A DNA stretch of 23,266 nucleotides from Octopus sinensis (Eukaryota): NCBI RefSeq assembly GCF_006345805.1, contig NW_021836480.1, positions 1 to 23,266 of the forward strand. The letters are read 5' to 3'. Under the pieces are notes generated by a model that saw only the letters and a list, made by a program, of their open reading frames with translations, was not told the DNA's origin and did not search any database. Shown here piece by piece: positions 1,305 to 9,107 of the stretch. Position 1 is the stretch's first letter. The number at the start of each line of letters is the position of its first letter. Both the position numbers and the translations under genes were made by a program.

Positions 1305-1502
<198 letters not shown>

Positions 1503-2039
1503 TCAAATTGATTAATGACTGAACATGGGGATTAATGAAGTATGAACGTCACACCTTCCCGTTTACTCATCTAAGAATAACATGCTTATATATATTTAGG
1601 TTACCGCTTCAAATGCGAATTAAGAACGGAAATGCGAGAACGAAATTGGCTTAGAAACTGCAAACTCAGGGCAAACATTTTTTACAAACAGGTCGATGGT
1701 TTTAATCGTAATATCGTAAAACGAACGCAGGTATAATGTGTCAAAGCCAACAGGAAGCGTCGATGCTTCCTAGGGCTAAATAGCGGTGGTGTAATTCCCT
1801 TTACGGGACTGTCACGTTATGTTGACAGTATACAACCACTCTATCGCTCCACCACCGCTCATGTCTCTTTGAGACGTTTAGAAATTCAATATTTCTAATA
1901 TATATATATATATATATATTCAAAGAGCAATAAAGATTCAAGTTAATTTAAAAAATTTACTTGAATATGGTACCTAACTTAGATGCACCAAAAAAAAACA
2001 ATACTGATTTAACAATACAGTAATGTGGGGTGATTATAA

Positions 2040-3022
2040 GCGAGAAAGAAGCAACAAGAATGGATAGGTTTTTAGTACGATCGTTTCATACAAGGACAGG
2101 TTTTATTAAAAGTTGCAAAGATTACAGCATATAAACGAGTCCCGTACTCATCAGCTAAAATACATGTAAGTTCTCTAGACATCCTAGTGTTTGAGGCTAT
2201 ACTCATGAAGTAATGTAGATAATTAAACAGATTTCTAAAGTTCATTAAAGTTCCTTAAAGATGATGTATAGTCTTATCACAGAATTTTAAAAAAGTTTTG
2301 ATAGCATCACAGAGAAGGTGACCTAATCCATATGAATTTCCATAGATATGATGAGGGATTATATACTCACAGAAGACAAATTTATCCATTGTTATTAGCA
2401 TTACAGAGAGGGTGAATTAATCCTTTGTATATATGCACAATTCCAAAGGTGTAGATGTAAATTTCCAGAGAAATGGAGATGAATTTCATATTCACAGGCG
2501 ATAAATTTTACAATGGTTGAACACAATGAGTAGGTACCTACCTCATTGTGTTCAACCATTGTAAATTTATCGCCTGTGAATATGAAATTCATCTCCATTT
2601 CTCTGGAAATTTACATCTACACCTTTGGAATCTGTGCATATATACAAAGGATTAATTCACCCTCTCTGTAATGCTAATAACAATGGATAATTTGTCTTCT
2701 GTGAGTATATCATCCTCATCATATCTATGGAATTCATATGGATTGGTCACCTTCTCTGTGATGCTATCAAAACTTTTTAAATTCTGTGATAAGACTATAC
2801 ATCATCTTAAGGAACTTTAATGAACTTTAGAAATCTGTTTAATTATCTACATTACTTCATGAGTATAGCCTCAAACACTAGGATGTCTAGAGAACTTACA
2901 TGTATTTTAGCTGATGAGTACGGGACTCGTTTATATGCTAATCTTTGCAACTTTTATAAAACCTGTCCTTGTATGAAACGATCGTACTAAAAACCTATCC
3001 ATTCTTGTTGCTTCTTTCTCGC
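2040..3022. repeat. 983-bp near-perfect palindrome (inverted duplication with no spacer)
   Basis: Left arm 2040-2535 is the reverse complement of right arm 2536-3022. Axis lies inside TAGGT|ACCTA. Hand alignment gives 12 indels and 1 substitution. Confidence 0.97.
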
Positions 3023-3080
<58 letters not shown>

Positions 3081-3082
<2 letters not shown>

Positions 3083-3461
3083 GAGCACTCCGTCAGTTAC
3101 GACGAGGGTTCCAGTTGATCCGATCAACGGAACTGCCAGTTCGTGAAATAAACGCACAAGTGGCTGAGCACTCCACAGACACGTGTATCCCTTAACGTAG
3201 TTCTCGGGGAGATTCAGTGTGACACAGAGTGTGACAAGGCTGGCCCCTTTGAAATACAGGTACAAGAAAAACAGGAAGAAAGAGTGAGAGAAAGTTGTGG
3301 TGAAAGAATACAGTTGGGTTCGCCACCACCCCCTACCGGAGCCTCGTGGAATTTTAGGTGTTTTCGCTCAATAAACACTCACAACGTCCGGTCTAGGAAT
3401 CGAAACTGCGATCCTATGACCGCGAGTCCGCTGCTCTAACCACTAGGCCATTGCGCCTCCA
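3081..3461 (-). mobile_element. tRNA-derived SINE, probably full length
   Basis: Minus strand starts GGAGGCGCAATGGCCTAGTGGTTAGAGCAGCGGACTCGCGG. A-box TGGCCTAGTGG at 3450-3440, B-box GTTTCGATTCC at 3406-3396. Ends in a (TA)n tract at 3024-3080. Confidence 0.85.
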
Positions 3462-3532
3462 TACAGAGACAAATAGATAGGTAAGTAAATAGATAGATGG
3501 ATATATAGAGAGATAGTTAGATATAAATAGAT

Positions 3533-3569
<37 letters not shown>

Positions 3570-4486
3570 AAGAGAGAGCAAGGAAGGTGACAGACAGACA
3601 CAATAAACGACTGTTGTTAAAAAGAAGCAATGGATTATAGGTTTGTGTAAGGGAGGGGGGAGTGGTGTTGTATATCTATTAAGGATATAAGGTTTTAGAG
3701 GTGTTCCTAACCGTCACCATAGAAACAGGTCCTAGAGAGGGATATAGATAGATTTAAGGTGGTAGTGTTTGAAAGGGCAGAAAGGGGACGATGATGGGCG
3801 GGCATAAATTGTATATTTGATCTAAGGACTTGTCTGATTTCTGTTTTTTGGCCGAAGTGTCGTATTCTGGGAACGGAAAACCGCGATAAGAGATTTTCCA
3901 CTTTGCTATTGAGACGAGGGTTAAACATGGATTTAAAAATTAACATCAAAGGAGGCAGTTTTTATTATTTTTGTGGGGAGGGGCGTCGGGGAGGAACCAG
4001 GTGGTGTTTTCTCTGTAACTTTTATATTTTGTTTAGGTTGTTGATGTTTTTCTTTAAATAAACTAAAATATAATTTTTATTATTATTATTCCCATGTTCT
4101 TTTCGGTTGTTATTGCTTGGTCCCAGTTCAAAACCGATTAAGTAAAATTAGGATCGAAGGCATTCCAGTCATGACCATCAATGACGAGATCGTTTGCTGC
4201 ATCCTTCATTTCGATTATTTTGAAATTAGCAGGTTATCACAAGGATGTCAGGTTAGCAACACCGAATTATCTTCATATATATATGGGGGGGGGGGGGGGA
4301 TATACCAATATCTGTTTTTCTGTTCAGTTATAACAAAAACAATTTTACATTAATCTGATGGGTTACTCTATACTTCTGTAGAGTACAAATTTATTATTCT
4401 TAAATGAGAATATTATTGACAGTAACTTCGAAGGTTCAGTCACCTAAGGCATCGTCGGACTGTCCGAACAACACTCATGTATTTTA

Positions 4487-4669
4487 ATTATATATATATA
4501 TATATAATATATATATATAATATATATATATATATATAATATATATATATATATAATTAATAATGATAAAACTCTGATTTTCGGATGTCGGGGTGGAAGC
4601 TCACGCCGCCATCTCTTCAGTATCCGGTCATCGGAAAAAAATGCTATGAAATATATATATATATATATC

Positions 4670-4701
<32 letters not shown>

Positions 4702-4712
4702 CATATATATAT

Positions 4713-4743
<31 letters not shown>

Positions 4744-4762
4744 GAGAGAGAGAGAGTGTATG

Positions 4763-4813
<51 letters not shown>

Positions 4814-4935
4814 CATAGCTTCATTTGAACTTGTCAATCCCTAAGATATATACGAATATATACGCATATATATATATATATATATATACGCATGCATGCA
4901 TACATACATATATTCATGCATATATACATATATAC
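4487..4935. repeat. (TA)n/(CATA)n/(CA)n/(GA)n compound microsatellites, interrupted
   Basis: Visible directly; bounds approximate. Confidence 0.9.
4565..4624 (-). ncRNA. degenerate type I hammerhead ribozyme-like motif (Penelope-like/retrozyme remnant)
   Basis: GATA-CTGAAGA-long stem II hairpin (GATG..CGG..GTG/CAC..CCG..CATC)-C-GAAA-short stem III-TATC. Stem I GATA/TATC is 4 bp; the cleavage triplet is a suboptimal UUU. Confidence 0.45.
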
Positions 4936-5280
4936 ACTTCGTTTTCGTATTTCGTTCACAATATTCTTGATGTGAATTCGTGAATTAAAATAAATCTTGT
5001 TGTCTTGGAAAGGTCATTACATTAATAATAGCACATACACTGGTTCAATATTACTTCTTTATAGATAAGATATTTAATCTAGTTGCAGATTAGAGATAGT
5101 TAACCAAGTGACTAACAATAAAAAAAGCTGATTGTTAACCAATGCATATGTTATTATTAGTGGCATATCCACCCCACCAAGACAAGCACCCTACATACAT
5201 AGACGTGTGTGTGTGTGTGGTAGCAGTAGTAGTTACCGGAAAATTAGAAGAAAGAAGAGTACGTAAGGTAGTTTACATAC

Positions 5281-5387
5281 GTGTATGGTGGGAGTATCTC
5301 ATATGGAGAATATCACAGGCGTGTATGTAATGGTATAATGTCTTCTCGATCAGATCTTGCGGTTCATAACCCGTCAGTTGCGCCACC
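5281..5387 (-). CDS. sim: single-minded internal exon, PAS-B, 107 nt (absent from the ORF track)
   Basis: AG|G GTG GCG... gives [36 protein letters not shown]+C. Acceptor tttcag ends at 5388, donor gtatgt at 5280-5275. Confidence 0.96.
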
Positions 5388-6696: not shown

Positions 6697-6896
6697 CTGG
6701 CATCTAGAAATATTAGCTTCAAGTCTAAACTGGCTCTGAACATAAACATATTGTTAAACATTTTAATCTCTGTTACAGCGCTAGGTGGCAGTGAATGGCC
6801 GACAGCTACCAGACCGACATTTTGGTAGCATCCGTCGTATGGTGAAATATCCATTGTGTATTGCTTGATTTTCAAGTAGCCACTACAATGAATTAC
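6697..6896 (-). CDS. sim: single-minded internal exon, linker and start of PAS-B, 200 nt
   Basis: [66 protein letters not shown]+AG. Acceptor ccag ends at 6897, donor gtgagt at 6696-6691. Confidence 0.97.
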
Positions 6897-7485: not shown

Positions 7486-7716
7486 AAGGCAGCGAGCAAG
7501 CAGACTCGTTAACATGCCGGACAAAATGCCTAACAGCATTTCTTCCGGCTTCTTGCGTTCTGGGTTCAAATTCCGCCGGAGTCAATTTTGGATTTCATCT
7601 ATTTGGGGACGATTAAATAAAGCATGTCAGACACTGGGGGCTGCTGTAATCGACTGGCCTCCACACCCACCTACTTCCCCAGCATTTCAGGACTTGCACC
7701 CAGAATAGAAAGAATT
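7486..7716 (+). mobile_element. diverged tRNA-derived SINE, same family as 13445-14049
   Basis: aaggcagcgagc...gttctgggttcaaattccgcc (B-box GGTTCAAATTCC), followed by a diverged body. Confidence 0.7.
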
Positions 7717-8344: not shown

Positions 8345-8398
8345 AACAATAACAACAATAATAATAATGATGATGATGATGATGATGATAATAATAAT

Positions 8399-8479
<81 letters not shown>

Positions 8480-8492
8480 AATATTAATAATG

Positions 8493-8569
<77 letters not shown>

Positions 8570-8578
8570 AATAATAAT

Positions 8579-8662
<84 letters not shown>

Positions 8663-8719
8663 AATAATAATTATAATAATTATAATAATAATAATAATAA
8701 TATAATAATAATAATAATA

Positions 8720-8754
<35 letters not shown>

Positions 8755-8769
8755 TGATAATTTAAAATG

Positions 8770-8808
<39 letters not shown>

Positions 8809-8842
8809 TAATAATGATGATGATGATGATGATGATAATAAT
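8345..8842. repeat. alternating (ATA)n/(ATG)n blocks
   Basis: Visible directly; source of the poly-I/poly-M pseudo-ORF. Confidence 0.97.
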
Positions 8843-9107
8843 AAGGGCAATAATCCAGATTACCTTTAGGAGATGACTAAAAGCAAACGAAGCTGATTTG
8901 TTGAAGAATTTCGGGGTTTCCTCCCCCCGCGGCCCCTAAAAACGCCAGCATTGTAATGTCAATCAGTTTGTGGAGTGGAAAGTATTCCAATGAGTTTAAT
9001 CAAACAGCCACAAGGTAGACTGCACGCGCTGGCGTAAATCATTCGACATTAGTCTGATGACCTATCGCGGTACCAAGATGCATTTCTTATGTTGCACATC
9101 ATCGGCG

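What the first reader, a model, noticed from the sequence alone, without database searches (positions are those of the whole stretch)
2040..3022. 1-kb zero-spacer palindrome with an error-like, one-sided divergence pattern
The 496-bp and 487-bp arms fold back on the axis TAGGT|ACCTA with no loop. The arms differ by 12 indel events and only 1 substitution. Ten indels are extra bases in the left arm, eight of them homopolymer extensions (for example TTTTAAAAAA versus TTTAAAAA, GGG versus GG). Natural divergence is normally dominated by substitutions, so this pattern resembles uncorrected long-read error. Either the palindrome is an assembly artefact from a fold-back read, or it is real and one arm was poorly sequenced or polished. 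If real, such a long perfect palindrome is rare and unstable (cruciform-forming) and could be a collapsed foldback or long-TIR element. Both ends sit next to TATA (2035-2038, 3024-3027). The arm sequence is not a microsatellite and I cannot assign it to a family.
Basis: partly seen in the sequence, partly recalled or inferred. Interest (0 to 1): 0.7.

Follow-up and report, generated by a model that had tools for sequence, protein, structure and literature searches.

The report
Intronic 1-kb hairpin palindrome with sequencing-error scars
A 983-base stretch folds back on itself almost perfectly inside an intron of an animal gene; it is probably real DNA (a hairpin-type mobile element or a repair-made inverted duplication), and the small differences between its two halves look like sequencing errors, so it is of modest interest.

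Summary
Positions 2040-2535 and 2536-3022 are reverse complements with no spacer. They differ by 1 substitution and 12 one-base-type indels, 10 of which make the left arm longer. Other repeats in the same window differ mostly by substitutions (about 8-24 per gap). The arm differences are therefore consensus errors, not evolutionary divergence.

The palindrome lies in the intron between two exons of a single-minded-like bHLH-PAS gene. A distant relative carries the same exons in the same order, so both flanks belong to one locus. This argues against a plain fold-back-read artefact, which would mirror everything up to the read or contig end, and against a join of unrelated loci.

The right arm abuts a (TA)28 tract that looks like the tail of a SINE-like repeat. 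TATA lies one base outside each end.

My best reading (about 0.55) is a genuine near-perfect palindrome whose arms could not be polished. Its origin is either a TA-targeting foldback or long-TIR element, or a fold-back repair duplication beside the (TA)n/SINE junction. A more complex assembly artefact remains possible (about 0.3).

No other copy could be found, because the species and its close relatives are absent from the searchable collections. Raw reads would settle the question. Interest is low to moderate.

The parts
2040..2535 (+). Left arm of the palindrome (496 nt). It continues leftwards into unique intron sequence.
   Evidence: alignment; searches show the sequence occurs only here and in the right arm.
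2536..3022 (-). Right arm (487 nt), the reverse complement of the left arm. It is 9 nt shorter net and lacks bases mainly in short homopolymers.
   Evidence: 1 substitution, 12 indel events, 10 of them missing here relative to the left arm.
2530..2541 (.). Axis GTAGGT|ACCTAC with no spacer. The centre is GGTACC.
   Evidence: The fold places a 4-nt tip here.
2035..2038 (.). TATA one base outside the left end (A2039 intervenes). It could be a target-site duplication, a microhomology, or the remnant of a (TA)n tract.
   Evidence: TATA within 0-2 nt of a random non-repeat position occurs at 3.7%.
3024..3080 (.). (TA)28.5 tract one base outside the right end (G3023 intervenes). Its first four bases mirror or repeat the left TATA. 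It reads as the 3' tail of the adjacent SINE-like repeat.
   Evidence: TRF, 100% matches.
3081..3460 (-). SINE-like repeat on the minus strand. It has a tRNA-like head with an A box (TGGCCTAGTGG, 3440-3450) and a B-box-like motif (GTTTCGATTCC, 3396-3406). The body ends at 3081, directly followed by (TA)n.
   Evidence: Read directly. ARAGORN and Rfam do not call a tRNA. Repeat status rests on my recollection of similar sequences and was not tested.
1306..1453 (-). Downstream exon (PAS-B, ...[49 protein letters not shown]) of a single-minded-like bHLH-PAS gene. It marks the left flank as part of the gene.
5281..5387 (-). Upstream neighbouring exon ([35 protein letters not shown]) of the same gene. 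The palindrome lies in the 3.8-kb intron 1454-5280 between these two exons.

Best explanation
The sequenced DNA probably does carry a near-perfect, spacer-less inverted duplication of about 0.49 kb per arm. It sits in an intron of a single-minded-like gene, directly next to the (TA)28 tail of a SINE-like repeat.

The 13 differences between the arms are not biological. They are residual long-read consensus errors, mostly missing bases in short homopolymers.

These errors survived for two inferred reasons:
- The arms are each other's reverse complement, so short reads map ambiguously. The right arm has no unique anchor: it lies between the left arm and (TA)28 plus a repeat.
- If nanopore data were used, reads lose bases in the arm that passes the pore second.

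The true palindrome is therefore probably perfect or nearly so, and young or homogenised.

I cannot separate two origins, and rate them about equal:
- (a) A non-autonomous foldback or long-TIR hairpin element inserted at a TA inside the SINE's (TA)n tail. Removing it together with one TA/TATA copy restores ...GATTATATATA..., a clean empty site.
- (b) A break beside the (TA)n/retroposon junction was repaired by fold-back priming at a micro-palindrome (GTAC/GGTACC). About 490 nt were copied back, and the end was then joined at or near TATA.

Shown: the structure, the error-like difference spectrum, and the collinear flanks. Inferred: that reads support the structure, which arm is wrong, and the origin.
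For: - Structure and counts.
- Indel-only differences against substitution-dominated divergence of all other repeats in the window.
- The neighbouring exons are frame-intact and give strong PAS_3/PAS_11 and PDB PAS-B matches, so unique sequence is accurate.
- Both flanks belong to one locus. Exons at 6697-6896, 5281-5387 and 1306-1453 (minus strand) bracket the palindrome. They match, in the same order and orientation, three blocks of a related species' contig.
- Fold-back artefact reads mirror the read about its midpoint (PMC12870357). That does not match 0.49-kb arms with unrelated flanks.
- True inverted duplications cause missed bases and low quality in nanopore reads after the junction (PMC7229812). 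This matches a shorter second arm.
- No adapter remnant at the axis or the ends (adapter sequences taken from memory).
- TATA lies at both ends, with a chance of about 4% on the left.
- Inverted duplications of flanking DNA formed by self-annealed 3' overhangs with 2-bp homology are documented at LINE-mediated insertion sites (bioRxiv 10.1101/2024.12.14.628481).
Against: - There are no reads, no second assembly and no second copy, so the physical existence of both arms is not shown.
- 13 errors per 983 nt is high for a region covered by many spanning long reads. This hints that one arm rests on few reads, which also fits an artefact.
- Spacer-less palindromes of this length are expected to be unstable in vivo.
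- For origin (a): the terminal bases do not pair (A2039/G3023), there are no subterminal repeats, and no family members were found.
- For origin (b): the junction needs a 1-nt filler or mismatch, and the left TATA could be coincidence.
Confidence: 0.55

Rival explanations
1. Assembly artefact. The genome has only one arm at this locus. The second arm was introduced by a chimeric or hairpin molecule, by gap closing or patching with a single corrected long read, or by stacking two haplotypes that differ by an inversion of the segment between the TA tracts.
For: - The arms differ only by error-type indels at about 2.5% if they are charged to one arm. That is the quality of a single corrected read rather than a deep consensus.
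- Fold-back reads with no sequence between the halves exist at about 0.6% in nanopore genomic data.
- The junction has no spacer.
- The arms are identical in substitutions, as expected if both derive from one template.
Against: - A fold-back read mirrors everything up to its end. Here the mirror stops after 487 nt and continues into (TA)28, a SINE-like repeat and the next exons of the same gene.
- A second chimeric junction, exactly at the symmetric point, would therefore be needed.
- No adapter remnant was found.
- The rest of the window shows no excess of indel errors.
Confidence: 0.3
2. A real palindrome whose indel differences are also real, for example slippage or error-prone repair synthesis in one arm during break-induced or fold-back replication.
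For: The differences are one-sided (10 of 12) and lie mostly in homopolymers. Homopolymers are where replication slippage and break-induced replication make frameshifts (established knowledge).
Against: - Twelve indels in 490 nt with a single substitution is orders of magnitude above known in vivo frameshift rates.
- All other repeats in the window diverge by substitutions.
- The one-sidedness is only p=0.04.
Confidence: 0.05
3. Two separate copies of a dispersed repeat that happen to abut head to head, or two loci wrongly joined at a shared repeat end.
For: It would explain two different outer flanks.
Against: - Both copies would have to start and end at exactly the same bases.
- The flanks are collinear parts of one gene.
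- No further copy or fragment of the arm occurs in 23 kb.
Confidence: 0.05

Closest known systems
Foldback-type and long-TIR non-autonomous DNA transposons (Drosophila FB and Galileo-like elements, hairpin MITEs)
   Same: Almost the whole element is two long inverted arms. It is non-coding, AT-rich and about 1 kb long, with sharp ends flanked by a short direct repeat (TA/TATA). It sits in an intron.
   Different: - No central spacer at all.
- No tandem subrepeats in the arms.
- The terminal bases are mismatched.
- The flanking repeat is uninformative because it lies in a TA tract and is self-complementary.
- No other family member or transposase relative was found.
Fold-back (templated) inverted duplications at DNA breaks, including those seen next to LINE-mediated insertions and in origin-dependent inverted-repeat amplification
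   Same: An inverted copy of flanking DNA is joined at a micro-palindrome. It lies next to a retroposon junction and a hairpin-prone (TA)n tract. The duplicated length is within the resection range.
   Different: - Those cases are somatic or experimental, and usually on the side opposite the tail.
- Here the event would be germline.
- The ancestral single-copy state could not be examined.
Palindromic AT-rich repeats (PATRRs) of human chromosomes 11, 17 and 22
   Same: They are near-perfect, spacer-less palindromes several hundred bases long in non-coding DNA. They are hard to sequence and clone and are prone to cruciform formation (established knowledge, not tested here).
   Different: This one is longer and only 67% A+T. 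Nothing is known here about polymorphism or rearrangement.
Fold-back chimeric reads of long-read sequencing
   Same: A zero-spacer inverted junction, with the second half of lower quality.
   Different: The artefact mirrors the read about its midpoint and has no independent flank on the far side. Here the mirror is short and embedded in a collinear locus.

Membership tests
Foldback / long-TIR MITE-like DNA transposon | Terminal inverted repeats | tested here: met
   The arms are 487/496 nt at 97% identity. This holds trivially for any palindrome.
Foldback / long-TIR MITE-like DNA transposon | Target-site duplication of fixed length flanking the element | tested here: inconclusive
   TATA (or TA) lies on both sides, one base outside the palindrome. 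It is part of a (TA)28 tract on the right and is self-complementary, so it is equally a palindrome extension or a microhomology. Left-side chance is about 4%.
Foldback / long-TIR MITE-like DNA transposon | Multiple dispersed copies and empty sites in the genome | not testable with these tools
   No other copy in the window. The two metagenome scans gave nothing beyond 21-24-nt chance matches, and the viral scan gave nothing. The species and its close relatives are absent from the collections.
Foldback / long-TIR MITE-like DNA transposon | Sequence relationship to a known element, or subrepeats in the arms | tested here: not met
   No internal subrepeats. No protein relatives of any arm reading frame.
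Long-read fold-back read artefact | Inverted junction with little or no intervening sequence | tested here: met
   Zero spacer.
Long-read fold-back read artefact | The mirror image extends to the end of the read or contig, symmetric about the read midpoint | tested here: not met
   The mirror ends after 487 nt. The flanks are different and collinear within one gene. Criterion taken from PMC12870357.
Long-read fold-back read artefact | Not supported by the majority of reads at the locus | not testable with these tools
   No read data.
Break-induced fold-back inverted duplication | Microhomology or short inverted repeat at the inversion junction | tested here: inconclusive
   The centre is GGTACC/GTAC, but any spacer-less palindrome has a palindromic centre.
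Break-induced fold-back inverted duplication | Single-copy ancestral state at the orthologous site | not testable with these tools
   The related contigs found (L001, L006-L008) are only about 82% identical in the exon and show no intron homology.

The most novel reading that the evidence does not exclude
The palindrome is a genuine, recent germline inverted duplication. It would have formed when a broken 3' end folded back at a micro-palindrome and copied about 490 nt of itself. That end was then captured at, or served as primer for, the (TA)n-tailed SINE insertion. This would be a natural, heritable counterpart of the retrotransposition-associated inverted duplications so far described in cultured cells and tumours. 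Alternatively, it is the first seen member of an unrecorded spacer-less foldback element family that targets TA microsatellite tails.
Probability: 0.25. Interest if true: 0.4.

Novelty: new member of a known kind. Interest (0 to 1): 0.2.

Why it matters
If real, this is a cruciform-capable perfect palindrome inside an intron of a developmental transcription-factor gene. It would be a potential fragile site and a clean example of either TA-targeted foldback-element insertion or fold-back repair next to a retroposon tail.

In practice it mainly matters as a quality flag. The 13 arm differences should not be read as variation, and the locus should be checked against reads before the assembly is used for structural or repeat analyses.

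If it is an artefact, it shows that inverted duplications can be embedded inside otherwise collinear contigs.

Tried and rejected
**Looking for independent copies or an independent assembly**
- A 22-mer and a 20-mer from the arm were scanned against metagenome contigs. The first gave nothing. The second gave four microbial contigs that match only 21-24 nt, which is chance.
- The viral contig scan gave nothing.
- A concatenation of all stop-free arm translations was searched against 5.8 billion proteins and gave no hit. The arm is non-coding and was not gene-called anywhere.
- Exact look-ups of four window ORFs found nothing on record.
- The exon search found only distant relatives, at 81-83% nucleotide identity in the exon. 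Their introns do not align, so the ancestral state of the site could not be read.

**Features tested and not found**
- Subrepeats in the arms, as in Drosophila FB elements: none.
- Adapter remnants (SMRTbell, nanopore, Illumina, Tn5; sequences from memory): none above background.
- tRNA or Rfam calls for the SINE-like head: none. The sub-threshold miRNA-like hits at 3014-3096 are just the (TA)n hairpin.
- Target-site duplications of the SINE-like repeat: none recognisable by eye.
- Homopolymer length spectrum as a clue to the sequencing platform: uninformative.

**Ideas rejected**
- Error-prone repair synthesis as the source of the indels. The density is far too high.
- A join of two unrelated loci. 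The flanks are collinear.

Full report
**What is there**

I read 1800-3300 and aligned 2040-2535 to the reverse complement of 2536-3022. The two stretches are inverted copies with no spacer, and the axis is ...AATGAGTAGGT|ACCTACCTCATT....

They differ by one substitution and 11 gap runs, or 12 events if the adjacent T and A are counted separately.
- Ten events are extra bases in the left arm. Eight lengthen short homopolymers. The other two are AC and a lone T.
- Two events are an extra G in the right arm.

The arm occurs nowhere else in the window and has no internal subrepeats. As single-stranded DNA the region folds into one hairpin of -546 kcal/mol. blastn extends the symmetry to 2035-3027, because TATA lies one base outside each end and is self-complementary. 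Bases 2039 (A) and 3023 (G) do not pair.

**Are the differences error-like?**

The window supplies its own controls. Six other repeat pairs, including a 183-nt unit repeated three times at 13495-14049 and 20/40-nt repeats at 15828-16020, differ by mismatches:gaps of 25:3, 11:1, 24:1, 17:1, 21:4 and 8:1. The arms differ by 1:12 (Fisher p about 5e-10).

Three nearby exons translate without frameshift into a 151-residue PAS-B region with strong Pfam and PDB matches. Unique sequence in this window is therefore accurate, and ordinary divergence here is substitution-dominated.

The arm differences are a local burst of indel errors. The one-sidedness is only marginal (10 of 12, p=0.039).

**Context**

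The window is animal DNA with 28% tandem repeats.

On the minus strand it carries three exons of a class-I bHLH-PAS gene. Sources name the closest homologues 'single-minded-like'. The exons are:
- 6697-6896
- 5281-5387
- 1306-1453

They splice in frame to ...[32 protein letters not shown]...[17 protein letters not shown]....

A 681-kb contig of a distant relative (L001) has matching blocks in the same order and orientation. The palindrome lies in the 3.8-kb intron between the second and third of these exons. Both of its flanks therefore belong to one collinear locus.

Immediately right of the palindrome come G, (TA)28.5 (3024-3080), and then a 380-nt SINE-like repeat on the minus strand. That repeat has recognisable pol III A and B boxes (3440-3450, 3396-3406) and its body ends exactly at the (TA)n. 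ARAGORN and Rfam do not call a tRNA there. That it is a dispersed repeat is my recollection, possibly of cephalopod sequences, and was not tested.

**Artefact or real?**

Fold-back artefact reads are documented at about 0.6% of nanopore genomic reads, often with no sequence between the halves. They mirror the molecule about its midpoint (PMC12870357). A contig that follows such a read turns back on itself and keeps going.

Here the mirror stops after 487 nt. The contig then continues through (TA)28, the SINE-like repeat and the next exons of the same gene. A second chimeric junction at exactly the symmetric point would be needed. Concatenation of two molecules, or a join of two loci, is excluded by the collinear flanks. 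No adapter remnant is present (adapter sequences from memory).

The error burst has known causes in a real palindrome.
- True inverted duplications make nanopore reads lose bases and quality after the junction (PMC7229812). This fits a shorter second arm.
- Short-read polishing is blind when two arms are reverse complements.
- By inference, the right arm in particular has no unique anchor within a typical insert length, because it lies between the left arm and (TA)28 plus a repeat. The left arm adjoins unique intron sequence.

Against this, 13 errors per kb is high for a deep long-read consensus. One arm may rest on few reads, which keeps a more complex artefact alive: gap patching with one corrected read, or stacking of haplotypes.

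My estimates are:
- real with erroneous arms: about 0.55
- artefact: about 0.3
- real indels: about 0.05
- head-to-head repeat copies or a wrong join: about 0.05

**Origin if real**

Two models fit equally well.

(a) A non-autonomous foldback or long-TIR element inserted at TA within the SINE's (TA)n tail.
- Deleting A+palindrome+G together with one TA/TATA restores GATTATATATA....
- TATA so close to the left end has about a 4% chance expectation.
- However, the terminal bases mismatch, there are no subrepeats, and no relatives were found.

(b) Fold-back repair.
- A break near the hairpin-prone (TA)n/retroposon junction is resected.
- The 3' end primes on itself at GTAC/GGTACC and copies about 490 nt.
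- The end is then joined with a 1-nt filler at TATA.
- Inverted duplications of this kind, with 2-bp homology, are described beside LINE-mediated insertions (bioRxiv 10.1101/2024.12.14.628481).

Error-prone synthesis cannot account for the indel density.

**What failed**

- Two metagenome scans and one viral scan with arm oligomers gave nothing beyond chance 21-24-mers.
- Arm reading frames have no protein relatives.
- Four exact ORF look-ups found nothing.
- The nearest species in the collections share only about 82% exon identity and no intron homology.

As a result, copy number, empty sites and the ancestral state could not be examined.

**Verdict**

The simple fold-back-read artefact is disfavoured. 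The most likely object is a genuine but ordinary kind of structure, a hairpin element or inverted duplication, with unpolished arms. Interest is low to moderate, and the raw reads would settle the matter in minutes.

Noticed in passing
window 6697-6896, 5281-5387, 1306-1453 (minus strand): Three consecutive exons of a single-minded-like bHLH-PAS gene (PAS-B region) with canonical splice sites. The window is therefore intronic and exonic DNA of a developmental transcription-factor gene.
   Followed up: yes
window 21057-21174 (+): A full-length 5S rRNA gene (Rfam RF00001, 68.5 bits, E 9e-13) sits alone among microsatellites. Short repeats at 20660-21237 resemble 14244-14468.
   Followed up: no
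window 3081-3460 (-), 640-760, 7553-7622, 13495-14049: SINE-like sequences are each followed by a long microsatellite: (TA)28, (ACAT)113 and (GT)n. One of them occurs as a 183-nt unit repeated three times in tandem. Microsatellites in this genome may largely grow from retroposon tails.
   Followed up: partly
window 12153-13117, 769-1223, 8348-8844, 11308-11725, 22071-22437: There are very long microsatellites: (GTAT)242, (ACAT)113, (AAT)166, (ATT)140 and (TAT)125. Tandem repeats cover 28% of the window. The (ACAT)n and (GTAT)n arrays are inverted relative to each other, 11 kb apart.
   Followed up: no
window 14807-15175 (-): A 122-residue ORF (…NRPDIMIWDREEKLCTVVEISCSAD…) has no Pfam match. 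From memory it resembles the C-terminal end of retroelement polyproteins common in invertebrates. This was not verified.
   Followed up: partly
window 4285-4299: A run of 15 G sits inside otherwise ordinary intron sequence. It is the only homopolymer longer than 9 in the window.
   Followed up: no
window 15828-16020: A 20/40-nt tandem repeat (about 9 and 5 copies, 82-83% matches) of unknown nature.
   Followed up: no
L001 10584-11942 (+): The related species' contig carries a 452-residue ORF without Pfam hits just downstream of the orthologous PAS exon. It may be a transposable-element gene inside the intron.
   Followed up: no
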